From Macrostomum lignano (lineage: Eukaryota): 28,258 nucleotides of DNA. The notes beneath the pieces were generated by a model. The model searched no databases. It was not told the origin of the DNA and saw only the letters and a list, made by a program, of their open reading frames with translations. The stretch is taken from positions 1 to 28,258 of the forward strand of contig NIVC01005029.1 of NCBI GenBank assembly GCA_002269645.1. The letters are read 5' to 3'. Position 1 is the stretch's first letter. The number at the start of each line of letters is the position of its first letter. Of this stretch, positions 1 through 27,614 are shown one piece after another. The translations under genes were made by a program, and so were the position numbers.

Positions 1-830
1 GGGAGGCTGGCCAGCAACTGAGATCTTGGAGGCTGCCAGCACTGAGGATCTGGGAGGGTGCTGCCCAGCAACTGAGGATCTGGGAGGCTGGCCAGCAACT
101 GACACTCTGGGAGGCTGGCCCAGCAACTGACACTCTGGGAGGGCTGGCCCAGCAACTGACACTTTGGGAGGCTGCCCAGCAACTGACACTCTGGGAGGCT
201 GGCCCAGCAACTGAGGATCTGGGAGGCTGGCCAGCAACTGAGGATCTGAGAGGCTGGCACAGCAACTGAGGATCTGGGATGCTGGCCAGCAACTGACACT
301 CTGGGAGGCTGGCCAGCAAACTGACACTCTGGGAGGCTGGCCACAGCAACTGACACTCTGGGAGGCTGGCCCAGCAACTGAGGATCTGGGAGGCTGGCCC
401 AGCAACTGAGGATCTGGAAGGCTGGCCAGCAACTGAGGATCTGGAGGCTGGCCCAGCAACTGACACTCTGGGAGGCTGGCCCAGCAAACTGACACTCTGG
501 GAGGCTGGCGCCAGCAACTGACACTCTGGGAGCTGGCCCAGCAACTGACACTCTGGAGGCTGCCCAGCAACTGACACTCTGGGAGGCTGGCCCAGCAACT
601 GAGGATCTGGGAGGCTGGCCCAGCAACTGAGGATCTGGGAGGCTGGCCCAGCAACTGAGGATCTGGGAGGCTGGCCCAGCAACTGAGGATCTGGGAGGCT
701 GCCCAGCAACTGAGGATCTGGGAGGCTGGCCCAGCAACTGAGGATCTGGGAGGCTGGCCCAGCACTGAGGATCTGGGAGGCTGGCCCAGCAACTGAGGAT
801 CTAGGAGGCTGGCATAGCAACAGAGGATCT
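1..830. repeat. 28-bp minisatellite (GAGGATCTGGGAGGCTGGCCCAGCAACT; variant GACACTCT...), about 29 copies, runs off the window edge; intron 3 of the BTB gene
   Basis: Period 28 seen directly (GAGGATCT at 601 and 629). Many 1-bp indels between copies. Confidence 0.95.
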
Positions 831-2514: not shown

Positions 2515-3297
2515 CCCGTGACACCTGTGGGATTTTAGATCAATGGGGGATTAGTGGCAACACCTGTGGGATCTGATATCCATGGGAGATTAGTAGCGAG
2601 ACACCTGGGGGATCTGAGATCTATAGGAGATTAGTGGCGAACACCTGTGGGATCTATGGGAGATTAGCGACGCTTGTGGGATGAGATCCCTGGCTATGGG
2701 AGATTAGTGGCGACACCTGTGGGATCTGAGATCCATGGGAGATTAATGACGACACCTGGGGGATCTGAGATCCATGGGAGATTACTGACGACACCTGTGG
2801 GATCTGAGATCCATGGGATATTAAAGGCGAACATCTGTGGGATCTGAGATCCATGGGAGATTAGTGGCGAGACACCTGGGGGATCTGAGATCTATAGGAG
2901 ATTAGTGGCGAACACCTGTGGGATCTATGGGAGATTAGTGGCGACACCTGGGGATTTGAGATCCACGGGAGATTACTGGCGACACCTGTGGGATCTGAGA
3001 TCCATGGGATGTTAAAGGCGAACATCTTTGGGATCTGAGATCCATGGGAGATTAGTGGCGAGACACTTGGGGATCTGAGATCCATGGGAGATTAGTGGCG
3101 AGACACCTGGGGGATCTGAGATCCATGGGAGATTAAAGGCGAACACCTGTGGGATCTGAGATCCATGGGAGATTAGTGGCGACACTAATGTGAGATCTGA
3201 GATCCATGGAGATTAGCGACACCTGGGGGATCTATAGGAGATTAGCGACACTAGTGGGATCTGAGATCCATGGGAGATTAGTGGCGACATGTGGGGG
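2515..3297. repeat. ~39-bp minisatellite (GACACCTGTGGGATCTGAGATCCATGGGAGATTAGTGGC, with shorter and longer variants) filling intron 1
   Basis: Direct tandem repetition. Each unit carries the internal palindrome GGATCT-G-AGATCC. Confidence 0.9.
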
Positions 3298-3356
3298 AGC
3301 TCCAAGATGCACAATCAAGCTGCGGAAAAGAAGGCACAAAAGCAGAATACACCAAC

Positions 3357-3744
3357 CAAGCACGTTGCGCGGCTTCAACCCAGCCAGTAGTGTCTGGGCG
3401 CAGTACTTGACCAGAACAGGCAGGCGTAGGTAGCAGGCTGCCGAGTGCAGCTGGGCCAGAGCCAGAGGCTCCATCGAGCCGGGATCCGGCAGGCAGCCGG
3501 TGTAGACAAAGTGCAGCGCATGGCTAAACGCATCAGGCGTGAGATGACGCGGTAGGTTAAAGTGTCCACAGTTTGGTTCCTCAGTTAGCAGGCGCATGAA
3601 ATGCGGTGACGCCGCCGCTAGAACGCATTTGTGCGCCAGAAAGCGGCGCCCGTGAACGCTAATCTGCAGATCGCAAAACATGCCCTCCTCGCGTAGCTTG
3701 GCCAGCTTGGCCAGGTGATCGGGTATGCCACTAGGCTCAGACAT
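3357..3744 (-). CDS. Exon 1 of BTB/POZ-BACK domain protein (Kelch-like family; any Kelch repeats would lie beyond the window)
   Basis: ATG at 3744. Contains CDLQISVHGRRFLAHKCVLAAASPHF, a classic BTB motif, plus FVYTG and LVKYCAQTL. Donor CTTG|GTTGGT at 3357/3356, phase 1. Confidence 0.9.
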
Positions 3745-4836
3745 TTGGGATACGGTATAGCCTGTCCGTTTAAATGTTGTGGCCTCTCTGGACTGCTAAT
3801 TTTAAGTGCAACGCATTCAAGCATGCAATTTTTTATTCAGAGTCTTGATGTTCAGAATGAACTTGAATAGACAATATAATGGCATGAAAACACAGTAAAC
3901 ACAATCATGCTTAAGCCATGGATCACTGGTTTGATTTTGTGTGCATTCATATTAGTTTGTGGCTTGTGCAAAAAATATCCTAAGGCTACATTGCTGCTAA
4001 GCTTTTGGAAAAAAAGGCCTACATTTCGGTTTACACACAATGATAAACCTTAAACTTAATTTGGTATATAAACAAAGTTTATCAGAATATAAATAAAAGA
4101 AATTTGTAATCAATTTAAATGATCAAAACATTTTGAACATTTTGCATAGGAACATGAATTTTATTAAGTCAAATGTATACTTTTACAATTAAAAAACATA
4201 AAAAGCATGTTTAACTTCATCAGAACTATATAAATAGCAATGCTATAGTACTTAGCCATTGCTACTACGAGCTATTTAAACATTTTTTAAATTATCAAGT
4301 TAGTTCATAGATAAAACAATTTCTAATCTTAGCATATTAGCATAAGGTGCTAATATTTGTTTTTATTGTAATAGGCAATCTAACAACATTGCTATTAATA
4401 TTTTATTAAAATGCCATAGGGTTAATAATCTCTCTATTAAAATCTACATATACTAATTAATGTAATAAACATGACATTAGGAACAAAATTTACTCCATAA
4501 TGTTTTAGCTCTAACTTTTTTTGCTTAAACTCTAGCTACATTTCAAAAAGGCTTTAGATCTTATAGTTAGACATAGTCCATTGGATTTTTAATACAAATA
4601 GTTGGTAAATCACTAGATCAGTAGCAGCATTGTTATAGACAAGATTGGCAATAGCATCGGGCAATGGGCATTGGCACTTATCACATTTTTTCTAGTATAC
4701 ACATACACTAAGCTATGCCTTTACTTAAAAAAATAATTATAAATAGTAAAGTGATTGCAGTTTCACTTTAACTTTATATAATTTATCCCATATATACTTA
4801 AAAAAATTTATGAATGATATAGACATATTGTATAAT

Positions 4837-5482
4837 GGCAACCAATCAAAAGGGTGACAGATGAAAAGGGCAACAGTCAAAAGGGCGATAGTCAAAAGGG
4901 TGACAGGGTATTAGACCAAGAACTACTTAAGTAGAAGATTGGGAAACCTTGTTTCTTTGAAAATCTTAGAATCTGCCTCCTATCAAAAGCAATAACAAGA
5001 TATGTTAAGACATTAGAAATATTAGGCCTAGAATTGTAAGTGTTGGTATTGTGCATGTATATATACATTAATGTACATTTAAACAGTTCAATGAGGTTTA
5101 TTTATTTTATTTATTTACTTCAAATACTGGAGAAAATTCAGCCGTGGCAACTGCTTAGCAGATGATCTACTAAAGGCAGTTAGTGAAATAAATGGACCTC
5201 ACTGAACCACATTTTAACATTAATAGTGTGTCCAATATGTGTCCAGCTTTTATACATAACTGCTTGTACATTTTTAACAATGTAACAATGTATGGTAACA
5301 ATACCATATATTGTTTTAACAAATACAAGTATGATACATTTTTACTGCTCTAGCAGTAACAAATACTTCTAATGTATATGGAACTTGTAATTTCAATATA
5401 AGTACACTGTAACTGTCGCCCTTTAGATTCTCGCCCTTTTGACTATCGCCCTTTTGATCTGTCACCCTTTTGACTTGCAGCC
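4837..5482. mobile_element. Non-autonomous TIR element (MITE), GG..CC ends, 9-bp TSD; MULE- or Merlin-like
   Basis: TSD TTGTATAAT at 4828-4836 and 5483-5491. Inverted subterminal repeats of TCAAAAGGGYGAYAG (about 4 per end). No ORF. Confidence 0.85.
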
Positions 5483-5978
5483 TTGTATAATGTAGTAAAA
5501 ATAAATAGTATAATAAAAATAATAATGAAAAATGATAGACAAAAATTGAAACATTTTATACTATTAATAGATAAAGGTTTTTGGATAGTTTCTTCTTTTA
5601 TTTTCTATCTTTATCTTTATTTTAAGTAGACATATTAGTTTTAATTTAGAAAAAAGTTTCTTTTTACTTATCAATAAATACAATTACTAAACCTATTAAC
5701 TATTTACTATACTTTAGACAAAAAAATTATTTCTTATATTTAAAAAATAGGTCCTATGCCTTACTATTTAGAATTCTTATGGCATAAATTATGACCATCA
5801 ATGCCACCTTATCTATAATGTGCAAAGTAAAGATTCCAATGATATATTTTTTGATATTTTAAGATTTTGATGTCCAACTTATTTGTTTAAGTAAAAGACC
5901 CTAGGATCTTTTTTGCTTAAAAAGTTTTAATTTTTTATTGATTTTTGTATATTTTTAGTAGCTGGGTCATTTTAAGAT

Positions 5979-6642
5979 GGCAGTGCTTATCCCCACGGTA
6001 CCGTAGGAATAATTTCTGTCTTATTCCAACGGTACCGTGCGAATAATTTTCTGCTTATCCGCACGGCACACTGAGGAGATAGCTGCCCTATCTTCTACAT
6101 ATGCCGTGCGAATAATTTTCTGCTTATCCGCATGGCACACTGACGAGATAGCTGCCCTATCTTCTACATATGCCGTGTTTAGTACATACGATTTGAGTGC
6201 AGTATAACAACTTTGTTGAATTATTGTTGAATAAGTATACAGAAGGGTATCAGTAAAGCAGAATAACACGCATTTACACATGCATATACTAGTCTAGAAC
6301 TGATTCGAGTTTATACATCATCAAGATCAACAGCTTCTTAGTATCCTCAGTTCAAATTCCCTTTCAATAAGCTATAAACTATTCACGCACAACATATATA
6401 TGTAGCAGATAAAAACCGATAGGGCAGCTAGTAAAGCAGAGGAAATAAAACAGAGGACGTGTAGGGCAGCTATCTCGTCAGTGTGCCGTGCGGATAAGCA
6501 GAAAATTATTCCCACGGCATATGTAGAAGATAGGGCAGCTATCTCGTCAGTGTGCCGTGCGGATAAGCAGAAAATTATTCGCACGGTACCGTTGGAATAA
6601 GACAGAAATTATTCCTATGGTACCGTGGGGATAAGCACTGCC
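5979..6642. mobile_element. Non-autonomous TIR element, ~180-bp TIRs with 69-bp internal tandem units, 9-bp TSD; MULE- or Merlin-like
   Basis: TIR starts GGCAGTGCTTATCCCCACGGTACC. TSD TTTTAAGAT at 5970-5978 and 6643-6651. The 69-bp period (6035 and 6104) explains the 23-aa repeat ORFs. Confidence 0.9.
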
Positions 6643-8998: not shown

Positions 8999-9965
8999 GA
9001 TCAGCAATCCCTGCTTATCACTGTACTGGCAAAACGCTTTCTGCTATCCAACACGGTAACTTAGTCTGCAATACTGCTTCAAAGGACTAATTCAGAAGAA
9101 CCAAGAAATCTTTTCCTGTTTCCTGTTAACTGATTAGGAAATCGAAAGGTTGAGGTTTCGTTTTATTTTGGCCTTGTATTTATACTAGTAATTAGAGTCT
9201 TGTTTCATTGGCTTACGTATCTAACATTAAAACAAATGAATGGCTAAAACAAATTATTCGCATCATTAAAACAAAATATTATTCAGTAAAACAAATTTAC
9301 GAATTAAAACAAATCATACGGTACTTATTATTTTGGCGGGAATTTAATTTCGCGGAAACAAACTAATTTTCTAGGAATAAACATAAGCCCTTCTACAATA
9401 TATCTTTTTTATATAGTTAAATTGCTGTTGGCAAAGCTATATATATTTAAAATTTCATTTTTTATCCTTACATTTTTCATTTTATGTTAGTGGATTCCAT
9501 AGTCAGGAAGGTGGCAAGTGCACGCGGGAATCAATTTATGGAAAAATCCTTGGTGCACGCCAATGTACACCAATTTTTTAAAACCCTTAACATGACGTTT
9601 CTGTTGCATGCCAAAAATCTTGAATACCAAAAATCATGTACGCCGAAAATTGTAGTATACCGTATTAGATACTATTTTTAAATAAATTTTCTACTTACGT
9701 TAAACAAAGTTTATATAGAAAAAGGAAATTCGCTTCAAAGAACATAGTGAGTATCAAAAACTTTTTCTTCACATTTCAAGAAACAAATAAACTAAAAGTC
9801 TACAAGAGTCACAAAATAAGAGCGTTTAAAAGTTATTAGATATTTTAATTTTAATGTTGGCTAGTAGAGTGTAGGCCTGGACTGTACGCATTTGTTTCCC
9901 CATTGATATTCGCATTGATATTCGAATTTTAACAAAAGCAAAATACTAAAAGCAACCCGTAGCAT

Positions 9966-12394
9966 GAAACTTTACACAGAGTAAACTGCAACCGCGAAAC
10001 GACTATTGGTCAAGTTTCAGCTCGATATGTAACTTTGGCTCTGAGCAGGAGCGATTTTCGATGTGTTCCATTTAAAATACATGTGATTCCAAAATTCGTA
10101 TTGATATTCGAGTACAGGTACTTCTGCTTCACTGATCTTGACGAAACTTTACACAGAGTAAACTGCAACCGTGAAACGACTATTGGTCAAGTTTCAGCTC
10201 GATATGTAACTTTGGCTCTGAGCAGGAGCGATTTTCGATGTGTTCCATTTAAAATACATGTGATTCCAAAATTCGTATTGATATTCGAGTACAGGTACTT
10301 CTGCTTCACTGATCTTGACGAAACTTTACACAGAGTAAACTGCAACCGTGAAACGACTATTGGTCAAGTTTCAGCTCGATATGTAACTTTGGCTCTGAGC
10401 AGGAGCGATTTTCGATGTGTTCCATTTAAAATACATGTGATTCCAAAATTCATATTGATATTCGAGTACAGGTACTTCTGCTTCACTGATCTTGACGAAA
10501 CTTTACACAGAGTAAACTGCAACCGTGAAACGACTATTGGTCAAGTTTCAGCTCGATATGTAACTTTGGCTCTGAGCAGGAGCGATTTTCGATGTGTTCC
10601 ATTTAAAATACATGTGATTCCAAAATTCGTATTGATATTCGAGTACAGGTACTTCTGCTTCACTGATCTTGACGAAACTTTACACAGAGTAAACTGCAAC
10701 CGTGAAACGACTATTGGTCAAGTTTCAGCTCGATATGTAACTTTGGCTCTGAGCAGGAGCGATTTTCGATGTGTTCCATTTAAAATACATGTGATTCCAA
10801 AATTCGTATTGATATTCGAGTACAGGTACTTCTGCTTCACTGATCTTGACGAAACTTTACACAGAGTAAACTGCAACCGTGAAACGACTATTGGTCAAGT
10901 TTCAGCTCGATATGTAACTTTGGCTCTGAGTAGGAGCGATTTTCGATGTGTTCCATTTAAAATACATGTGATTCCAAAATTCGTATTGATATTCGAGTAC
11001 AGGTACTTCTGCTTCACTGATCTTGACGAAACTTTACACAGAGTAAACTGCAACCGTGAAACGACTATTGGTCAAGTTTCAGCTCGATATGTAACTTTGG
11101 CTCTGAGCAGGAGCGATTTTCGATGTGTTCCATTTAAAATACATGTGATTCCAAAATTCGTATTGATATTCGAGTACAGGTACTTCTGCTTCACTGATCT
11201 TGACGAAACTTTACACAGAGTAAACTGCAACCGTGAAACGACTATTGGTCAAGTTTCAGCTCGATATGTAACTTTGGCTCTGAGCAGGAGCGATTTTCGA
11301 TGTGTTCCATTTAAAATACATGTGATTCCAAAATTCGTATTGATATTCGAGTACAGGTACTTCTGCTTCACTGATCTTGACGAAACTTTACACAGAGTAA
11401 ACTGCAACCGTGAAACGACTATTGGTCAAGTTTCAGCTCGATATGTAACTTTGGCTCTGAGCAGGAGCGATTTTCGATGTGTTCCATTTAAAATACATGT
11501 GATTCCAAAATTCATATTGATATTCGAGTACAGGTACTTCTGCTTCACTGATCTTGACGAAACTTTACACAGAGTAAACTGCAACCGTGAAACGACTATT
11601 GGTCAAGTTTCAGCTCGATATGTAACTTTGGCTCTGAGCAGGAGCGATTTTCGATGTGTTCCATTTAAAATACATGTGATTCCAAAATTCGTATTGATAT
11701 TCGAGTACAGGTACTTCTGCTTCACTGATCTTGACGAAACTTTACACAGAGTAAACTGCAACCGTGAAACGACTATTGGTCAAGTTTCAGCTCGATATGT
11801 AACTTTGGCTCTGAGCAGGAGCGATTTTCGATGTGTTCCATTTAAAATACATGTGATTCCAAAATTCGTATTGATATTCGAGTACAGGTACTTCTGCTTC
11901 ACTGATCTTGACGAAACTTTACACAGAGTAAACTGCAACCGTGAAACGACTATTGGTCAAGTTTCAGCTCGATATGTAACTTTGGCTCTGAGCAGGAGCG
12001 ATTTTCGATGTGTTCCATTTAAAATACATGTGATTCCAAAATTCATATTGATATTCGAGTACAGGTACTTCTGCTTCACTGATCTTGACGAAACTTTACA
12101 CAGAGTAAACTGCAACCGTGAAACGACTATTGGTCAAGTTTCAGCTCGATATGTAACTTTGGCTCTGAGCAGGAGCGATTTTCGATGTGTTCCATTTAAA
12201 ATACATGTGATTCCAAAATTCGTATTGATATTCGAGTACAGGTACTTCTGCTTCACTGATCTTGACGAAACTTTACACAGAGTAAACTGCAACCGTGAAA
12301 CGACTATTGGTCAAGTTTCAGCTCGATATGTAACTTTGGCTCTGAGCAGGAGCGATTTTCGATGTGTTCCATTTAAAATACATGTGATTCCAAA
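9966..12394 (+). repeat. Left arm, about 13.7 tandem copies of a 177-bp unit
   Basis: Period 177 (TTGGCT at 10035 and 10212). Copies differ almost only at one G/A site. Confidence 0.97.
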
Positions 12395-14904
12395 CAACAA
12401 CAACAACAACAGAGTACGCTGCCAGTTCGCAAAAGCAGCGTCAGATGGCGCGCTTCGAAGCTTGGGCGCGAACAAAGGCCGCACCGCCGGCAGAGTCCGG
12501 GGTGCCGGCGTAAGCCAGCAGACAGTCGACGTAGCGCCGAGTCCTCGCCTGTCCCCGCCGGTAGGGTGCCTGCAACGTAAGTAGCAGCACCTCCTGCACC
12601 GGCTCCGGACAGTAGGCCTCGGTGCGGATGACGTGGCCTGCTAGCTGGAGTCGCCGACGGCGCAGCAGATCGCTAGGACGGGCCAGGCCGGCGCGATGAT
12701 AGAGCGCCGTGTTGGTGACTCGCTCGTTGCCGATCTTGAAGGCGGCGCGCAGCAGGCCAGCGTGCGCCGCGTCGACTTGAGCCTCGAGCGAGTCTATCAG
12801 CGTCCAGGTCTCGGCGTTGTATAACAGGACGGTCTCGATCACCGCCTGGAACAGCGCCGCCCTCTGGCGGTCCGGTAGGGCCTCGGACTGCAGGACTGAC
12901 CTTATAGAACGAAAGGCAGCCCAGGCAAGTCCTCGGCGACGCCGCAGATCCTCGCGGACGTCGGGAACCAGACCGCCGAGGTAGACGAACTGCTGACATC
13001 TTGGAAGCTCACTCGCCTGTCCATCAGCGCCTCGGCAGAAGATTGCAGCCTCGGTGTCGTCCGGCACGCATAGCACGACGGTCTTCTGCGTGTTGACCAC
13101 CAGGCCGACGCTCGCCGCAACGGCAACCAGTCTATCCAGCTGTCGTTGGGCGCCCTCGAGGGCGAGGTCATCGGCGTAGCCAAGCACGCTGAGCCGTCTC
13201 TCCGGTTGGCGTCGACCCACGCGTCGCCGCAGCAGGAAGCCGTCGTCGTTGGAAGGCAGAGCAGTCCGTAGCACCCAGTCAAGCACCAGAATAAATAGGA
13301 ACGGCGCTAGCGTATCTCCCTGGAGCACCCCGGAGGATGTCTCGAAGAAATCCGATAGGCCGTCCGGTGTTTAGACAGCAGCCGTCGTGCCGTGATATAG
13401 CGCCATGACAGCAGAAATCAGCAGGTCTGGCACGTTGTACGCACGGAGCACCTCTGGGAGCGCGTCCCTCACGACCGAGTCGAAGGCCTTCCTGAAATCG
13501 ACGAAGATCAGGATCAGGGTCAACTGGCGGATGCGCGCCTCCTCGATGACTCGCCGAAGAGCCAGGATCTGCGTCACTGTGCCGCGATGGGGCCGGAATC
13601 CGTTCTGCTCAGGCCACAGGTACGGGTCCAGCACAGTCTGTAACCGCGATAGCAGCATGCGGTTGAACAGCTTCGCGGCGCAGGACTGTAGGCAGATGCC
13701 TCGATGCTCCTCGAGCTTGGTGGTGCCCGGCTTCTTTGGAATGGCGACGATGTGCGCCGTGGTCCATTCGTTTGGCGCCACCTCACCGGAAAGCACGCGG
13801 TTCATCACTCTGGCGACCTGAGTGGCCACGCAGTGGATCCGCAGCGCCTCGGTGGGCACCTCGTCTGGACCAAGCGCTTTGCCGCCCGGCGACTGCCGAG
13901 CGAACTTCACAACGTCGGCTGTGCTGACTGGGGCAACGTTGAAGCTCTCCTCCGCCGGCAACGGCGTCTCCGGCGGCAGCCTCAGATTTTCTGGAAGCGG
14001 AGGGGGCGGCGCGTTGACAATGGCGGCGAAGAACTCGCGCAGCTCGTTCCTGCGCTCATCCGGAATGTCGCCTGCTTGGTTGAGCGCGATGCGCCGCTTT
14101 CGCCCCGTCAGAGTGTTGATGACGGACCAGGCCACGCGCCCTCTGGCATCGGGCCCTGCGGCAGAGACGGCTTGGATGGCGTCATCGACAGCGGACTGCT
14201 GCCGCTGCAGGTAGACAGCCGCCAGAGCCTCCTCCGCCTCACGAGTTTGCCGCCCACTCAGACGGAGCCTCTCCAGATCTTCCCTCGCTTCGTCGATCGC
14301 GGGGTCGTCCTGCCAGACCGGCTGCCCGCGCTGGGCCGGTCGCATCAGCGGGACTGCTTGCTCCGCAGCGGCTCGAACTGCAGCGCTCACCTCCGCGTAC
14401 TCGGCTCCTCCACGCTTGTCGCCCAGCGCAGTGACAAAGACACCGGCAAAGCGACGCCGCGTCTCGGCGTCCCTGAGCGCGCGGTAGCAGCGCCGCGGTG
14501 GCCGCTTTGGCGGACGGTAGAGCGGGTCCCGAAGCCGAAGGTCGCAGATGAGCAGCCGATGGTCGGACAGCAGAGCCAGCGGCGTAATGGTGCGGCAGTT
14601 GGTGACGCGGCGGCACTCACGAAAGCGCATAAGCACGTGGTCGAGCTGTGCCAGCCTCCGCGTAGCGTTCCGGCCGCGCGCGTTCCGCCGCCTCTGCTTG
14701 CAGCCGACGAAGGTCGCGAGCCTGCCCGGTGACTTGCGGAATCTGGTGTTGGCCGACACCATGTCCTGTCTCTCCAGGAAGTCCTCTAGCGCTCCGGTAA
14801 TGCCGTTCTCGCGAGCTGTCACAAACAGCGATCGCTCGGACCTACGCAGAACTGCGTTCAGGTCTCCGAGAATGACCACTGTGTTACGTTGCGCCATCTC
14901 CTCC
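12395..14904 (-). mobile_element. 5'-truncated non-LTR retrotransposon, RTE/RTEX-like (AP endonuclease C-terminal part plus reverse transcriptase), with (GTT)n tail
   Basis: APE motifs ILGDLNA, LDHVL and SDH. RT motifs GPDEVP, RGICL, EQNGFRP, FVDFRKAFDSV, GVLQGDTLAP and YADD. C-terminal RRRRLQLAGHVIR. About 30-bp 3' UTR, then (CAA)n on the + strand at about 12392-12410. Clade assignment is from family knowledge, not a search. Confidence 0.93.
12441..14904 (-). pseudogene. LINE ORF (APE-RT) broken by one in-frame TAA at 13371-13373 and lacking its N-terminus
   Basis: ORFs 13371-14906 and 12441-13328 are in the same frame: ...TTAAV*TPDGLSDFFETSSGVLQGD... YADDLAL runs straight into EGAQ, possibly a short in-frame deletion (inference). 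Confidence 0.88.
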
Positions 14905-16297
14905 ACCTGTACTCGAATATCAATATGAATTTTGGAATCACATGTATTTTAAATGGAACACATCGAAAATCGCTCCTGCTCAGAGCCAAAGTTACATATC
15001 GAGCTGAAACTTGACCAATAGTCGTTTCACGGTTGCAGTTTACTCTGTGTAAAGTTTCGTCAAGATCAGTGAAGCAGAAGTACCTGTACTCGAATATCAA
15101 TATGAATTTTGGAATCACATGTAATTTAAATAGAACACATCGAAAATCGCTCCTGCTCAGAGCCAAAGTTACATATCGAGCTGAAACTTGACCAATAGTC
15201 GTTTCACGGTTGCAGTTTACTCTGTGTAAATTTTCGTCAAGATCAGTGAAGCAGAAGTACCTGTACTCGAATATCAATATGAATTTTGGAATCACATGTA
15301 TTTTAAATGGAACACATCGAAAATCGCTCCTGCTCAGAGCCAAAGTTACATATCGAGCTGAAACTTGACCAATAGTCGTTTCACGGTTGCAGTTTACTCT
15401 GTGTAAAGTTTCGTCAAGATCAGTGAAGCAGAAGTACCTGTACTCGAATATCAATATGAATTTCGGAATCACATGTATTTTAAATGGAACACATCGAAAA
15501 TCGCTCCTGCTCAGAGCCAAAGTTACATATCGAGCTGAAACTTGACCAATAGTCGTTTCACGGTTGCAGTTTACTCTGTGTAAAGTTTCGTCAAGATCAG
15601 TGAAGCAGAAGTACCTGTACTCGAATATCAATACGAATTTTGGAATCACATGTATTTTAAATGGAACACATCGAAAATCGCTCCTGCTCAGAGCCAAAGT
15701 TACATATCGAGCTGAAACTTGACCAATAGTCGTTTCACGGTTGCAGTTTACTCTGTGTAAAGTTTCGTCAAGATCAGTGAAGCAGAAGTACCTGTACTCG
15801 AATATCAATATTAATTTTGGAATCACATGTATTTTAAATGGAACACATCGAAAATCGCTCCTGCTCAAAGCCAAAGTTACATATCGAGCTGAAACTTGAC
15901 CAATAGTCGTTTCACGGTTGCAGTTTACTCTGTGTAAAGTTTCGTCAAGATCAGTGAAGCAGAAGTACCTGTACTCGAATATCAATACGAATTTTGGAAT
16001 CACATGTATTTTAAATGGAACACATCGAAAATCGCTCCTGCTCAGAGCCAAAGTTACATATCGAGCTGAAACTTGACCAATAGTCGTTTCACGGTTGCAG
16101 TTTACTCTGTGTAAAGTTTCGTCAAGATCAGTGAAGCAGAAGTACCTGTACTCGAATATCAATACGAATTTTGGAATCACATGTATTTTAAATGGAACAC
16201 ATCGAAAATCGCTCCTGCTCAGAGCCAAAGTTACATATCGAGCTGAAACTTGACCAATAGTCGTTTCGCGGTTGCAGTTTACTCTGTGTAAAGTTTC
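14905..16297 (-). repeat. Right arm, about 7.9 inverted copies of the same 177-bp unit
   Basis: Reverse complement of the left-arm unit, with more private substitutions than the left arm. Confidence 0.97.
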
Positions 16298-17791
16298 ATG
16301 CTACGGGTTGCTTTTAGTATTTTGCTTTTGTTAAAATTCGAATATCAATGCGAATATCAATGGGGAAACAAATGCGTTGGACTGTAGGCTAGGCTGTAGC
16401 CTCAACTAGTTGGTTTAATGAATATTCAAATTCAATTGTTCACGTTTAACTTTATATATTGTATATATATAGTGTATACATCTATATTTGACTTGTTGAT
16501 ATACTGTCAGTTTGTATTTGCACGCCAAGGTTACACGCCAAGTAAAAAACTTATACGCTGAAAATTTAGGCGTGGCTTGAGACCCCTATTTGCACGCCAA
16601 CTTTGCACACCAAAATTTTAGCGTGGCTTGTGCACGCGGGAAAATTCCCGCGTGCAGGCCACCTTCCTGAGTATGAAGTGGATTCCATATTTGATTTTGT
16701 ATTTTACCATTCTGCTGCTAATTCTACGTTTTACTATGCTATTCCATTCTGATTCCCCTGTGGATTCCACATTTTACCGGGTACCATATATTAGGCCTAG
16801 CAAATACAGATAATTTGTTCAAAACTTTAGAGCAATGCTAGACCTGTGCCATGGAGGATTTAGTAAAAAAAATTCACATTTTAAGCAATTTTTGCACTTT
16901 GGATAGAAAGACTTGGATTTAGAAAATTTTAAAATAGCCTATGTTAGATGTCACTTTCTATATATGTTCATTTTTATGCTTAGTATATCATGGCCATAAG
17001 ATAAAGATAGTCTCGACTCTCTTACTAGGCCAGCCCTAGGCTTACTATAAATGTAAATTTTGAATTTTATAATTTAAGCATATTTGAATGGCAATAAGGC
17101 AGGACTACTAGCTATATAGTAACAAGCTTATTTGACTAAAGGCAAGCTAGTGCTAGCTAAATAGTAGAAAAATTTTATGGGCAATAGGCCCAGCTGGCTA
17201 GCTAGAGTTTTGGCACCACAACACAACTCATTTTCTAAGTTCTAATGGCTATGGATCTGGCAGTGCTATATAGAACTTAAAAAATATTTTAAAAGATTAA
17301 AAAGACTAGGCCTAATAAGAATATGGCTTATATCTATTTAAAATTCAACATTAAAAGTATCTCCTTTCAAATCTTGAGACTCATCATCTAGTCTTAAATC
17401 TTATCTAGAACAAAGTCTCAATTTCTGCCACTTATAGAAAAACTATACTCCAGAAGGCATAGATCATGCTGAAAAATTCTGGCATGCATTTAGTTTAGCC
17501 TAAAATTGTAGCATGCATTGGCATATATTTGGGTATTGTATGCCAAAAGTGGCATGTTGGCATGCTATGGCATAGAAATAGCAGGCATAATAATAGTGAG
17601 GCATATTTTTTAAGACAAAAGTTCATGAAAAGACTTTGTATTGTGAAATGAAGACAAGAATTCATACTTATTTTTATTGCAAAATAACAAGTAAATTTTA
17701 TTGTGCCAAAAAAAGTTATTTACTTAGTATATTTATTATTTGCATGCTACAATAGTTTTAAAAAATGTTGAAGACTCAATAACATGATCTA

Positions 17792-17963
17792 CATACATGT
17801 GCAAATTTGGGAATCACCCGGCCATTTCTATTGGCAACATACACATGTAAGTCGCTATTGGCTGAGAGCAGTCACGTGACTACTATTCCGTCCAATAGCA
17901 ACTTACATGTGTGTGTTGCCAATAGAAATGGCCGGGTGAATCCCAACGTTGCGCCCAAGCATG
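17792..17963. mobile_element. Hairpin MITE copy 1 (CATACATG..CATG ends, 8-bp TSD; P-like or hAT-like)
   Basis: TSD ATGATCTA at 17784-17791 and 17964-17971. Long internal inverted repeat centred on GTCACGTGAC. Three copies in the window. Confidence 0.9.
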
Positions 17964-19844: not shown

Positions 19845-20515
19845 GAGGAAAGGAGAGGGGAGCGGCTGGAGAGGAGCTCGAGGGAGACGCTAGAGAAGAG
19901 GGAGACGCTAGAGAAGAGGAGGAGGCTAGAGAAGAGGGAGACGCTAGAGAAGAGGGAGACGCTAGAGAAGAGGAGGAGGCTAGAGAAGAGGGAGACGCTA
20001 GAGAAGAGTGGAAGGCTAGAGAAGAGGGAGACGCTAGAGAAGAGGGAGACGCTAGAGAAGAGTGGAAGGCTAGAGAAGAGTGGAAGGCTAGATAAGAGGG
20101 AGACGCTAGAGAAGAGGGAGACGCTAGAGAAGAGTGGAAGGCTAGAGAAGAGGGAGACGCTAGAGAAGAGTGGAAGGCTAGAGAAGAGGGAGACGCTAGA
20201 GAAGAGGGAGACTCTAGAGAAGAGGGGAGGCTAGGGAAGAGTGGAGATGCTAGATAAAAAACGAAGGCTAGTGAGGCTAGTGAGGCGGGAGAAAAAAAGA
20301 GGAGACTATAGAACGGAAAAGGGGGCGAGGTGAGAGAGAAAAGCGGTGGGGAGAGGCGATAGAGAAGAGAGGTGAGGGTACAGAAATGAGAGAAGACAAT
20401 ACAACATGTAAGAGGATAAGTAAGATGGGAAATGAAATTAAAGCAGAGAATTGTGAAGAGAGAGAAAAGAAAGAAGCTGATGAGATGGATCAGAGAAGAG
20501 CTAAGAAGAGACACG
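19845..20515. repeat. Purine-rich 18-bp minisatellite (GAGGGAGACGCTAGAGAA, about 20 copies, to about 20230) followed by GA-rich low-complexity sequence
   Basis: Seen directly. It produces the LEKRET and SSLASP repeat ORFs. Confidence 0.9.
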
Positions 20516-21420
20516 TCAAACCTTGAGCGAGCGAATTGCTATTGTGGAGTTTCAATAAAGTACCCGAGGGCCGGATAGAGAGGCTTCGTGGGCCGCATGT
20601 GGTCTATAGCAACTCCTAATCAAGGACTTCTAGACTAGCAGGACGTAAAACTCAAAGATCGTGTAAATTTTTAGGAGGACGATTTCCTGGAAAAAATACA
20701 CTGCGGAGATAGGAGCAAATCATTTTTTCATCACAAAATCAATGATTGCATTTGATCTAAGGCAGCTAAGATAACCATTCTTTTTATTTAGCACGCACAA
20801 CATGTTACTCTATTATATTTTAATGTAGTTGTGTCTTGAAAGTTTCATCTTCATATTATTTTCTTTTTATTTCATAAGCCCCAAGTTGCAAAATACTCAC
20901 AAGTGGCATTAGCCGAACTTTGTATTTTTCCTTTTTAAAATCAAGTATATTTGCAATAAAAATGCTGCATTACGGTACTATTAAGCCATTATTGTAGGTA
21001 TAATTCCATTTCAATGTAGTAACTATACTAATAGACCTGTCTATGTAGTTAAATATATAAGGACAATATTTACAATATGCCCCCACCATTTTCATTTTTC
21101 TTGTTTTACCTAGGCCTCAAGTCTTTAGAAAGCTATCAGTTTTTACCTGAAAGCCAGACAGAAAAAAATGGTTAGGGCCTAGGCCTAGTCACAAAAATGG
21201 GCACTAACCTTTTTTCTAGGTTTTTACACTTTTAATTAGGCTTAGATTTTTAATTTTTTATTGCAAATTTGAATACACTATACTATATAAACTAGGCCTA
21301 GCACCCAGCTGGTTTAGGTTTACCTTCCTTGAATTATATATTTTGTTGAATATAATACCTTTAAAATTGCAATTTTAGTTTGTAATGGTATATTTCATAT
21401 CATATTTGAATCATAGGCCT

Positions 21421-21599
21421 CATACATGCGCAACCTTGGGAATCACTCGGCCATTTCTATTGGCAACACAGAACACACACATGTAAGTTGCTATTGGATG
21501 GAATAGTAGTCACGTGATTGCTCTCAGCCAATAGCAACTTATATATGTGTGTTGCCAATAGAAATGGCCGGGTGAATCCCTAGGTTGCACCCAAGCATG
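21421..21599. mobile_element. Hairpin MITE copy 2 (central segment inverted relative to copies 1 and 3)
   Basis: TSD ATAGGCCT at 21413-21420 and 21600-21607. Confidence 0.9.
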
Positions 21600-23364: not shown

Positions 23365-23534
23365 CATACATGCGCAACCTGGGGAATCACTCGGCCGTTT
23401 CTATTGGCAACACACATGTAAGTCGCTATTGGCTGAGAATAGTCACGTGACTACTATTCCATCCAATAGCAACTTACATGTGTGTGTTGCCAATAGAAAC
23501 GGCCGGGTGAATCCCTAGGTTGCGCCCAGGCATG
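23365..23534. mobile_element. Hairpin MITE copy 3
   Basis: TSD CTATGCCG (23357-23364) and CTATGCCT (23535-23542), 7 of 8 matching. Confidence 0.9.
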
Positions 23535-24434: not shown

Positions 24435-25569
24435 CTGAAACAAAATATGTTGAAATATAAAGAATTTAATTGTTCAGGGTTAATGCAAAAATAAATATTA
24501 TCAAAGGTTGTCAATTGTATTTTAATATATAAGTCAACATAAAAAAAAAGCTAATACATAAGCAAAAGGTACAAAAATTCAATTAGAAGTTTTACTACTA
24601 TATGATGTAAATTTTTAGCTAAAAAAGTAATTTAAACTTAAAATAGTACACATATAAAACTATTTTAACAAATTCCTTTTTCTTAAACTATTATTTAACA
24701 TTTACCTTTTCTAACGACTACTAATCTATTTATTTTGTTAATTATTAATGCAAATATATTTCTTATTAACACATTTTAACCTATAAAACTTGCAATTTAA
24801 TAATAATAATAATAATAATATTAAAAGTTAAATACTAAAAAAATCTAGAATATTTCTTATAGATAGGCCTACTTAGTAAAAATGGTTAGAGCTTGTTTTT
24901 GTGCCTAGGTCTATATGACTATATTCTTGCTCCTATATATGCAGGTCTAGCTTAAAAAACTGATAGCTTTCTAAAGACTTGAGGCCTAGGTAAAACAAGA
25001 AAAATGAAAATGGTGGGGGCATATTGTAAATATTGTCCTTATATATTTAACTACATAGACAGGTCTATTAGTATAGTTACTACATTGAAATGGAATTATA
25101 CCTACAATAATGGCTTAATAGTACCGTAATGCAGCATTTTTATTGCAAATATACTTGATTTTAAAAAGGAAAAATACAAAGTTCGGCTAATGCCACTTGT
25201 GAGTATTTTGCAACTTGGGGCTTATGAAATAAAAAGAAAATAATATGAAGATGAAACTTTCAAGACACAACTACATTAAAATATAATAGAGTAACATGTT
25301 GTGCGTGCTAAATAAAAAGAATGGTTATCTTAGCTGCCTTAGATCAAATGCAATCATTGATTTTGTGATGAAAAAATGATTTGCTCCTATCTCCGCAGTG
25401 TATTTTTTCCAGGAAATCGTCCTCCTAAAAATTTACACGATCTTTGAGTTTTACGTCCTGCTAGTCTAGAAGTCCTTGCTCCTAATTACTCTTGCGGCAC
25501 TCTGAGGCACCGCGCCCTGTGGCATTGTCTCAACGCCTTACTGGCTGAAAATGTGAAAGGCTTTTAATT

Positions 25570-26994: not shown

Positions 26995-27614
26995 GGAAGT
27001 GCTTCTCCCCACAGTCCCATGCCAATTGCAATAATTCCAATTTTATCCACACGGATCCATGTCAATAATTTCCAGCTTATCCCCATGGTAGCTTATTGAA
27101 ATAGCTGCCACCATTCAAGTCTATAGGCCGTGTCAATAATTCCAATTTTATCCATATAGATCTGTGTCAATAATTTCCAGCTAATCCCCATAGCAGCTAA
27201 TTAGAATAAAGAACCTTAAAATGAATCTGTTCAAAAACTGTCTTTTTGTTTTTATTGTTTTACAAATCTTCCAAATAAACTACATATATATTGAATAGTA
27301 TCAAGTACTTTGTTAAAACTTTTTGTCATTAAAAGGGTTAATTTTAAATATTTGCATGGCTGCTAGCTTTAATTAAAACAACCAAATGACCCAAAGATCA
27401 AAGTAAATGAGACTTGCAAAATCTAACTTTCAATATATAATAAGAATGATAATAGTACTAATAATAATAACAATATTGATTTAATGTCAGTACACAAAAC
27501 TAAACATAAACAACTGCACAATCTTAGCCATCGAAATAAGCTAAAAATTATTGACATGGATCCGTGTGGGTAAAATTTGAATTATTGGCATGGACCATGG
27601 GGATAAGCACTTCC
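26995..27614. mobile_element. Older non-autonomous TIR element related to the 5979-6642 family
   Basis: TIR GGAAGTGCTT(C/A)TCCCCA... versus GGCAGTGCTTATCCCCA. Subterminal CAATAATT..TTATCC repeats. Decayed 9-bp TSD ATTTGTAAT / ACTTATAAT (7 of 9, both differences transitions). Confidence 0.7.

What the first reader, a model, noticed from the sequence alone, without database searches (positions are those of the whole stretch)
9886..16377. Foldback transposon built from inverted 177-bp satellite arrays with an RTE-like LINE plugged into its axis of symmetry
Seen: an 8-bp TSD and 80-bp unique TIRs enclose about 13.7 satellite copies on + and about 7.9 on -. The array changes orientation exactly across the LINE, and the LINE has no TSD. 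The arms stop in almost the same phase of the unit. The left stops at ...GATTCCAAA, which overlaps the (CAA)n tail. The right extends 26 bp further to ...GAGTACAGGT, the middle of a self-complementary GTAC in the unit. Known: foldback elements with tandem repeats in their TIRs exist (Drosophila FB, Galileo, Tetris), and LINEs can patch double-strand breaks without TSDs. Inference: the ancestor was a spacer-less palindrome made by snap-back at GTAC. Its cruciform tip broke and was healed by LINE cDNA with a 26-bp deletion, so the LINE now acts as a stabilising spacer that could travel as cargo.
Basis: partly seen in the sequence, partly recalled or inferred. Interest (0 to 1): 0.85.

Follow-up and report, generated by a model that had tools for sequence, protein, structure and literature searches.

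The report
Foldback transposon with LINE at centre
This is a long-inverted-repeat ("foldback") DNA transposon whose arms are arrays of a 177-bp repeat, with a truncated LINE retrotransposon joining the two arms; the anatomy is real, but it is a new example of known kinds of element, and this single locus does not show that a broken palindrome was healed by the LINE.

Summary
Element 9886-16377 has an exact 8-bp target-site duplication (TGGACTGT) and identical 80-bp ends. It carries 13.7 (+) and 7.9 (-) copies of a 177-bp unit, and a 2,510-bp minus-strand LINE lies exactly between the two arrays.

New points:
- Each 177-bp unit repeats an 18-nt motif from the terminus (17/18 match). These are probably extra transposase-binding sites.
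- The left arm grew by 3-unit blocks.
- The LINE is RTE-like by architecture, not by phylogeny. It lacks about 0.7 kb at its 5' end and has one in-frame stop. Its (TTG)n tail is shared by relatives.
- The LINE's 5' junction carries a 5-nt microhomology (CAGGT), seen by comparison with the closest relative. The right arm therefore ends somewhere in unit positions 149-154, not provably at the centre of GTAC.
- The near-equal phase of the two arm ends has about 30% probability by chance.

The foldback-plus-nested-LINE reading stands. The snap-back origin at GTAC, the 26-bp deletion and the cargo role are unsupported. A break at the centre and an ordinary insertion with loss of a middle domain are about equally likely. 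No other copy was found in any collection searched. Interest is low to moderate.

The parts
9878..9885 (.). Left copy of the 8-bp target-site duplication, TGGACTGT
   Evidence: it abuts the element start directly and is identical to 16378-16385.
9886..9965 (+). Left terminal domain, 80 bp and non-repetitive. It holds two tandem copies of CATTGATATTCG.
   Evidence: 0 mismatches to the right terminal domain; found nowhere else in the window.
9966..12394 (+). Left arm array: 13 full 177-bp units plus 128 bp. It shows a 3-unit higher-order pattern: G133A in units 3, 9 and 12, and units 7-9 are identical to units 10-12.
12393..12394 (.). 3' junction overlap: AA could come from the unit (CCAAA|A) or from the LINE tail. 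This is the priming site for reverse transcription on the + strand.
   Evidence: read directly from the sequence.
12395..12409 (-). LINE tail, (TTG)5 on the minus strand
   Evidence: Relatives L004 and L005 end in (TTG)5 and (TTG)7.
12410..12440 (-). LINE 3' UTR, 31 nt, with a 6-bp stem CGCTGC...GCAGCG
12441..14904 (-). LINE reading frame: C-terminal part of the endonuclease domain, a linker, the reverse transcriptase and a C-terminal region. It is 5'-truncated by about 139 codons plus the 5' UTR, roughly 0.7 kb. There is one in-frame TAA at 13371-13373, and the terminal TGA is at 12441-12443.
12975..13742 (-). Reverse-transcriptase domain (Pfam RVT_1, residues 388-643 of the translation)
   Evidence: E=7e-24, 85 bits against a cut-off of 29.6.
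14905..14909 (.). 5' junction microhomology: ACCTG (CAGGT on the minus strand) belongs both to the satellite unit and to the LINE sequence
   Evidence: the alignment to L001 runs into the satellite, GTACAGGT|GGAGGAG against L001 GTGCAGGTGGAGGAG.
14905..16297 (-). Right arm array: 7 full units plus 154 bp. It has more private substitutions than the left arm.
16298..16377 (-). Right terminal domain, 80 bp
16378..16385 (.). Right copy of the 8-bp target-site duplication, TGGACTGT

Best explanation
**What it is.** A non-autonomous foldback-type (long-TIR) DNA transposon, 3,982 bp without its insert, integrated here and made an 8-bp target duplication. Each arm is an 80-bp terminal domain followed by a tandem array of a 177-bp unit. 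Every unit carries one copy of an 18-nt motif that also occurs in the terminal domain (ATTCGYATTGATATTCGA). The arms are therefore most likely stacks of transposase-binding sites (inferred). The arm lengths differ because the arrays change copy number independently, and the left arm shows 3-unit block duplications.

**How the LINE got there.** A single retrotransposition event of an RTE-like LINE replaced whatever lay between the arms.
- Reverse transcription was primed from a + strand 3' end in the left arm at CCAAA, which pairs with the (UUG)n tail. The junction is shown; the mechanism is inferred.
- Synthesis ran about 2.5 kb.
- The cDNA end was captured by the minus-strand 3' end of the right arm through a 5-nt CAGGT microhomology. 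The junction is shown by comparison with a relative.
- This produced no duplication and lost at least 21 bp.

**What cannot be decided.** The locus does not tell whether the initiating lesion was an endonuclease nick or a pre-existing break, nor how much was lost. I lean slightly to a break at or near the centre of closely apposed inverted arrays (about 0.45) over insertion in an arm with loss of a middle domain and inner repeats (about 0.35).
For: - Duplication, identical ends and inverted arrays.
- Motif shared by terminus and unit: 17/18 over 18 nt. The 11-mer ATTGATATTCG occurs 25 times in the window, all inside the element, against 0.01 expected.
- Unequal repeat numbers in the two TIRs, and TIR repeats acting as secondary transposase-binding sites, are described for Galileo (PMC3573991). 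The same domain plan, with 8-10 bp duplications, is described for Tetris (PMC4079207).
- LINE identity: RVT_1. Relatives carry Exo_endo_phos plus RVT_1 on contigs of 3.0-3.5 kb. (TTG)n tails occur in L004 and L005. The window copy starts at residue ~140 of P0007.
- 5' microhomology.
- Microhomology at LINE junctions is documented for both classical and endonuclease-independent insertions, and deletions for the latter (PMC1920257).
- Full-length RTE-clade elements normally make 10-12 bp duplications (PMC1291365), so their absence here marks a non-standard resolution.
Against: - No second copy of the terminus or of the 177-bp unit was found in any collection. Mobility as a family, the transposase superfamily and the ancestral centre are all untested.
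- The LINE sequence upstream of the truncation point is inferred from a relative that is only 84% identical. The 5-nt microhomology is therefore probable, not proven.
- No reads were available to verify the assembly of two near-identical inverted arrays.
Confidence: 0.72

Rival explanations
1. The ancestor was a perfect, spacer-less palindrome created by snap-back at the GTAC at unit positions 153-156. Its cruciform or hairpin tip broke exactly at the axis. The break was healed by LINE cDNA with loss of 26 bp from the left arm only.
For: - The arm ends are 21-26 bp apart in phase.
- The maximal right-arm end coincides with the centre of a GTAC.
- The difference in arm length equals 6 units minus 26 bp, and the left arm shows 3-unit block duplications.
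- There is no duplication around the LINE.
- Non-spaced inverted repeats are known to be breakage-prone (PMC3300023).
- LINEs can patch breaks (PMC1920257).
Against: - The phase coincidence has p about 0.30.
- The right junction lies in a 5-nt microhomology. The end cannot be placed at the GTAC centre, and the position is explained by annealing to the cDNA.
- 13 of 177 positions are centres of 4-bp palindromes.
- The inner units of the two arms are no more alike than in any other register: 9-13 mismatches at every shift.
- The LINE keeps a complete tail and has no extra nucleotides, unlike most break-repair insertions (PMC1920257).
- Nothing bears on a snap-back origin.
Confidence: 0.15
2. An ordinary endonuclease-driven LINE insertion into the inner left arm of a foldback element that had a middle domain. 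The middle domain and inner right-arm repeats were lost either by a concomitant large target-site deletion or by a later deletion that also truncated the LINE.
For: - Foldback elements such as Tetris have a middle domain of variable size.
- Three other inverted-repeat elements in this window have spacers of about 300-500 bp.
- Both LINE junctions show the normal annealing signatures.
- The right arm is 6 units shorter than the left.
- Deletions of kb scale accompany some LINE insertions.
Against: - It requires a deletion that removed every base of the middle domain yet stopped inside the right array.
- Large deletions are a minority of LINE insertions.
- The near-equal phase would be coincidence (p about 0.3).
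Confidence: 0.35
3. The LINE was already the centre of the element before it transposed to this site. The chimera moved as a unit, with the LINE as cargo. This concerns when the LINE arrived relative to transposition, so it is compatible with any of the insertion models above.
For: Nothing direct. The arms differ by about 0.8% and the LINE has only one disabling substitution, so the two are of similar, young age.
Against: No other copy with the same LINE junctions was found. In-situ nesting is the simpler assumption.
Confidence: 0.2
4. Assembly artefact: the inverted arrays, or their junctions with the LINE, are a chimeric join.
For: Near-identical inverted arrays are hard to assemble, and the copy numbers could be wrong.
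Against: - The flanks are unique and carry an exact 8-bp duplication.
- Both LINE junctions have biologically coherent signatures: the tail primed at CAA/AA and a 5-nt microhomology.
- Diagnostic variants mirror each other from the outside: T30C in unit 1 of both arms and G133A in unit 3 of both.
Confidence: 0.05

Closest known systems
Tetris foldback transposon of Drosophila virilis (PMC4079207)
   Same: It has long TIRs with an outer unique domain followed by tandem repeats of about 220 bp, 8-10 bp target duplications, no coding capacity, and TIR repeats related to a satellite.
   Different: Tetris has a much longer flanking domain (up to 866 bp), an inner TIR domain and a middle domain. Here the terminal domain is 80 bp, the unit is 177 bp, there is no sequence similarity, and the centre is occupied by a LINE. 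The host is an unidentified AT-rich animal genome.
Drosophila FB elements and Galileo (P superfamily) (PMC3573991; FB from general knowledge)
   Same: The TIRs are internally repetitive, the two arms differ in repeat number, and the repeats are proposed or shown to be extra transposase-binding sites. Some FB copies have little or no central loop (general knowledge).
   Different: FB makes 9-bp duplications and Galileo 7-bp ones. Their repeat units are shorter or degenerate. No transposase is known for the present element.
Xenopus Tx1 composite elements: the Tx1L LINE inside the Tx1D DNA transposon (general knowledge; mentioned in PMC1950540)
   Same: A non-LTR retrotransposon resides inside a DNA transposon that carries internal tandem repeats.
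   Different: Tx1L is site-specific for a sequence in the repeats and makes a duplication in many copies. Here there is one locus, no duplication, and relatives show no common target.
Endonuclease-independent or deletion-associated LINE-1 insertions (PMC1920257)
   Same: There is no duplication, target DNA is lost, and both junctions show microhomology.
   Different: Most such L1 events carry extra nucleotides or lack a proper tail, and they occur at sites unlike the endonuclease consensus. Here the tail is intact, and the endonuclease preference of this LINE family is unknown.
RTE-clade LINEs such as SR3 of Schistosoma mansoni (PMC1291365)
   Same: Full length is about 3.2 kb, with a single ORF holding an AP-endonuclease and a reverse transcriptase, and a very short 3' UTR ending in short tandem repeats instead of poly(A).
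   Different: Clade membership was not tested by phylogeny. The family is GC-rich (57-67%), and its nearest named relatives are from Macrostomum lignano. SR3 copies have 10-12 bp duplications.

Membership tests
Foldback-type (long-TIR) DNA transposons | Long terminal inverted repeats that make up most of the element | tested here: met
   The arms are 2,509 and 1,473 bp and 99% complementary. Together they are 100% of the non-LINE sequence.
Foldback-type (long-TIR) DNA transposons | TIRs built internally of tandem repeats | tested here: met
   A 177-bp unit, 13.7 and 7.9 copies.
Foldback-type (long-TIR) DNA transposons | A target-site duplication flanking the whole element | tested here: met
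   TGGACTGT on both sides, exact and abutting.
Foldback-type (long-TIR) DNA transposons | Multiple dispersed copies, or evidence of mobility | tested here: inconclusive
   No further copy in the window, in viral contigs or in metagenome contigs (the one hit is a chance match in a bacterial gene). The array peptide finds no relatives. The source genome itself is not in any searchable collection.
Foldback-type (long-TIR) DNA transposons | A cognate transposase or superfamily (Mutator, P, ...) | not testable with these tools
   No autonomous copy is available. An 8-bp duplication fits several superfamilies.
RTE clade of non-LTR retrotransposons | A single ORF with an N-terminal AP-endonuclease and a reverse transcriptase, about 3.2 kb | tested here: met
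   RVT_1 in the window copy. Relatives P0005 and P0007 carry PF03372 with or without PF00078 on contigs of 3.0-3.5 kb.
RTE clade of non-LTR retrotransposons | A very short 3' UTR ending in short tandem repeats, with no poly(A) | tested here: met
   A 31-nt UTR plus (TTG)5, with the same tail in L004 and L005. The criterion is from PMC1291365.
RTE clade of non-LTR retrotransposons | Phylogenetic placement of the reverse transcriptase and endonuclease within the clade | not tested
   No reference set of clade sequences was on hand. PDB matches are only generic L1 and R2 reverse transcriptases.
Endonuclease-independent (break-repair) LINE insertion | No target-site duplication, with loss of target DNA | tested here: met
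   No direct repeat at 12394/12395 against 14904/14905. At least 21 bp of unit sequence is missing.
Endonuclease-independent (break-repair) LINE insertion | An insertion site unlike the element's endonuclease cleavage consensus | not testable with these tools
   The consensus of this family is unknown. Three relatives' 3' flanks give no clear pattern.
Endonuclease-independent (break-repair) LINE insertion | 3' truncation, loss of the tail, or extra nucleotides at the junctions (frequent, not obligatory) | tested here: not met
   The tail is intact and both junctions are clean. The criterion is from PMC1920257.

The most novel reading that the evidence does not exclude
The centre of a spacer-less foldback transposon extruded a hairpin or cruciform and broke. 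It was sealed by LINE cDNA, primed and captured on the two resected arm ends. The resulting chimera is stabilised by its 2.5-kb spacer and can be mobilised as one unit by the foldback element's transposase. This would be a natural case of a retrotransposon rescuing, and then hitch-hiking in, a DNA transposon.
Probability: 0.12. Interest if true: 0.6.

Novelty: new member of a known kind. Interest (0 to 1): 0.3.

Why it matters
This is a clean, young example of how satellite-like arrays are carried inside transposon arms. That is one proposed route by which satellites are seeded.

It also shows a LINE joining the two arms of a large inverted repeat with fully readable junctions. If other copies or an empty allele showed that the arms once abutted, it would be a natural record of palindrome centre-break repair by retrotransposition. 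As a single locus it is mainly an annotation result: a new foldback family, a 177-bp repeat, and a GC-rich RTE-like LINE family with (TTG)n tails.

Tried and rejected
- **Other copies by DNA.** Exact-pattern scans with the terminus and with the unit found nothing in viral contigs or in metagenome contigs. A second metagenome scan with the terminal double motif gave one hit, a chance match inside a GC-rich bacterial gene.
- **Other copies by protein.** The open frame that runs through the array finds no homologues.
- **Satellite as a structured or catalytic RNA** (for example a hammerhead retrozyme). There is no Rfam match even at E<=1 and no excess folding (z = 0.38). Rejected.
- **Inverted duplication generated by the LINE event itself** (fold-back rearrangement). 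Rejected, because the two outer flanks are unique and carry a direct 8-bp duplication.
- **Register test.** I asked whether the inner units of the two arms are mirror copies. Every shift of 0-6 units gives 9-13 mismatches, so the test is uninformative.
- **Host identification.** A BTB exon (3235-3795, minus strand) found only one unnamed Logan relative. The LINE's named relatives are all from Macrostomum lignano, at 84% identity or less, so the host is not identified.
- **Ribozymes at the 5' ends of LINE relatives.** None found.


Full report
**1. The observation**

Tandem Repeats Finder reports two arrays of one 177-bp unit. One is at 9966-12394 (13.7 copies, 99% matches) and the other at 14905-16297 (7.9 copies, 98%), with the consensus of the second being the reverse complement of the first. 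The inverted-repeat search gives arms 9886-11358 and 14905-16377, 1,473 nt, 99% complementary.

I cut both arms into an 80-nt outer segment plus 177-nt units. The outer 80 nt are identical in the two arms. The units differ from the consensus at 0-4 positions each. Immediately outside the element the sequence TGGACTGT occurs on both sides, at 9878-9885 and 16378-16385. An exact 8-nt match at fixed positions has a chance of about 1.5e-5. The 38-nt terminus occurs only at these two places in the window.

Between the arrays lies a 2,510-bp segment (12395-14904) of 64.7% GC, against 38% in the arms and 33-35% in the flanks.

**2. The arms**

The 80-bp terminal domain contains CATTGATATTCG twice in tandem. 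Every 177-bp unit contains the same core in the same orientation. The best local alignment of terminus and unit is ATTCGCATTGATATTCGA against ATTCGTATTGATATTCGA, 17/18. The 11-mer ATTGATATTCG occurs 25 times in the window, all inside the element, against 0.01 expected.

The arms are therefore stacks of a terminal motif. In Galileo, such TIR repeats hold secondary transposase-binding sites, and the two TIRs of one copy commonly differ in repeat number (PMC3573991). That the motif binds a transposase here is inference.

Unit 1 of both arms shares T30C and unit 3 of both shares G133A, so the arms mirror each other from the outside. The left arm has a three-unit periodicity (G133A in units 3, 9 and 12; units 7-9 are identical to units 10-12), the mark of block duplication. 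The right arm has more private changes. The arm-length difference is 6 units minus 26 bp.

The unit has no Rfam match and no unusual fold. One reading frame is open through both arrays (177 = 59 codons), but its peptide has no relatives. I take the open frame as chance.

**3. The LINE**

On the minus strand the segment is one reading frame from 14904 to a TGA at 12441-12443, interrupted only by a TAA at 13371-13373. Pfam finds RVT_1 (E=7e-24).

Its relatives are unnamed metagenome or Logan proteins and Macrostomum lignano reverse transcriptases, up to 84% identical. The longer ones combine Exo_endo_phos and RVT_1 and sit on contigs of 3.0-3.5 kb. One of these contigs is from a Tara Oceans marine metagenome.

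Against P0007 the window copy begins at about residue 140, inside the endonuclease domain. About 0.7 kb is therefore missing at the 5' end. After the stop codon come 31 nt with a 6-bp stem, and then (TTG)5. L004 and L005 end in (TTG)5 and (TTG)7.

A single ORF, about 3.2 kb and a very short 3' UTR ending in a short tandem repeat are the stated hallmarks of the RTE clade (PMC1291365). "RTE-like" is therefore fair on architecture. I did not test it by phylogeny.

**4. The two LINE junctions**

*3' junction.* The + strand reads ...GATTCCAAA|CAACAACAA.... The unit would continue ...CCAAAATTCG. The left arm thus ends at unit position 128, with a 2-nt overlap (AA) between the unit and the tail. A + strand 3' end here can pair with the (UUG)n tail and prime cDNA synthesis rightwards.

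*5' junction.* The minus strand reads ...GAGTACAGGT|GGAGGAGATGGCG. I aligned this stretch, including 40 nt of satellite, to the closest relative L001. The alignment continues into the satellite: window GTACAGGTGGAGGAG against L001 GTGCAGGTGGAGGAG. The protein context (VQVEEMAQR in P0007) agrees.

So CAGGT is most probably present in both partners, giving a 5-nt microhomology. By chance this would be about 1e-3 for a given junction. Two consequences follow.
- The junction looks like ordinary microhomology-mediated attachment of the cDNA end. This is documented for classical and for endonuclease-independent L1 insertions (PMC1920257).
- The end of the right arm cannot be placed more precisely than unit positions 149-154.

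There is no direct repeat around the LINE, whereas full-length RTE-clade copies make 10-12 bp duplications. At least 21 bp of unit sequence is missing.

**5.

The inference rests on two coincidences.
- *The arms stop in nearly the same phase.* An offset of 26 of 177 or less has probability 53/177 = 0.30 if the two ends are independent.
- *The right arm stops in the middle of a GTAC.* In the unit, 13 of 177 inter-base positions are centres of palindromes of 4 bp or more. With a 6-position ambiguity the chance of including one is roughly a third. The microhomology also gives an independent reason for the position, since CAGGT occurs once per unit and only 1-3 times per LINE.

A register test does not help, because the units are too uniform: there are 9-13 mismatches at every shift. 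Break-repair L1 insertions in humans lost 31 kb at 21 loci, so even a true break-repair event need not mean a small deletion.

The data therefore do not show a spacer-less ancestor, a 26-bp deletion or a snap-back origin. They do not exclude them either. The LINE abuts array sequence on both sides with no trace of a middle domain. Long non-spaced inverted repeats are known fragile sites (PMC3300023).

Weighing priors, Tetris and the other inverted-repeat elements in this window have spacers, while some FB copies do not (general knowledge). Against the weak likelihood ratio, I put a break at or near the centre of closely apposed arms at about 0.45 and insertion with loss of a middle domain at about 0.35.

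**6. Rejected alternatives**

A fold-back rearrangement generated by the LINE event itself is excluded by the unique flanks and the direct 8-bp duplication.

Misassembly cannot be excluded without reads. It is unlikely, given the coherent junction signatures and the mirrored outer variants.

**7. Comparison with known systems**

The element has the plan of Tetris (outer domain, tandem-repeat domain, 8-10 bp duplications, non-coding) and of FB and Galileo. It shares no sequence with them, and its transposase is unknown. I file it as a new foldback-type family on structure, with mobility and superfamily untested.

A LINE inside a repeat-bearing DNA transposon recalls the Xenopus Tx1 composites (general knowledge), but nothing suggests site specificity here.

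**8. Searches for other copies**

No match to the terminus or the unit was found in viral contigs. In metagenome contigs the unit found nothing, and the terminal motif gave one chance hit in a bacterial gene. The protein route found nothing either.

The host genome is not in the searchable collections. A BTB exon in the window has a single unnamed relative. The decisive test, the centres of other copies or an empty allele, could not be run.

**9. Verdict**

The anatomy is real and well resolved. The element is a new member of known kinds, in a very transposon-rich window. Interest is 0.3.

Noticed in passing
window 3235-3795 (minus strand): An open segment of 187 codons encodes a BTB/POZ domain (Pfam PF00651, E=2e-16). 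It is probably an exon of a host gene. Its only relative in the protein collection is an unnamed Logan protein at 60% identity.
   Followed up: partly
window 1-830, 1364-1898, 2520-3298: Three GC-rich minisatellites lie next to each other in an otherwise AT-rich window: 28 bp x30, 21 bp x25 and 40 bp x20.
   Followed up: no
window 4837-5484 and 5979-6642 (and possibly 27029-27598): There are further small foldback-like elements whose inverted arms are themselves tandem repeats. One has 15-bp units and a 506-bp spacer. Another has 181-bp arms (98% complementary) with 34/69-bp units and a 302-bp spacer. They show that internally repetitive inverted-repeat elements with spacers are common in this genome.
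   Followed up: partly
window 20621-21144 and 24955-25478: A 524-bp perfect (100%) inverted repeat encloses 3.8 kb with no reading frame longer than 93 codons. It may be another long-TIR element or a recent inverted duplication.
   Followed up: partly
window 17799-17954, 21428-21590, 23372-23525: Three copies of a MITE-like repeat of about 150 bp that is itself palindromic (arms 88-93% complementary).
   Followed up: no
window 19880-20254: An 18-bp purine-rich tandem array (GAGGGAGACGCTAGAGAA x21) with strong GC and AT skew.
   Followed up: no
window 10035-12584 (+) and 14858-16228 (-): The 177-bp unit is exactly 59 codons, and one frame stays open through both arrays, giving ORFs of 849 and 456 aa. 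No homologues were found, so this is probably chance (roughly 3%).
   Followed up: yes
window 12410-12440; L004 and L005 3' ends: The LINE 3' UTR carries a short stem (CGCTGC...GCAGCG) just upstream of the (TTG)n tail. L004 has GACTGCA...TGCAGTC at the same place. This may be the recognition hairpin for the reverse transcriptase.
   Followed up: no
L001, L003, L004, L005: The LINE family is GC-rich (57-67%) in every source, while the contig ends are AT-rich. Relatives occur in a Tara Oceans marine metagenome and in Macrostomum lignano, so the family is spread among marine or aquatic invertebrates. Short hairpin-forming AT-rich sequences sit at the 5' ends of L001, L004 and L005.
   Followed up: partly
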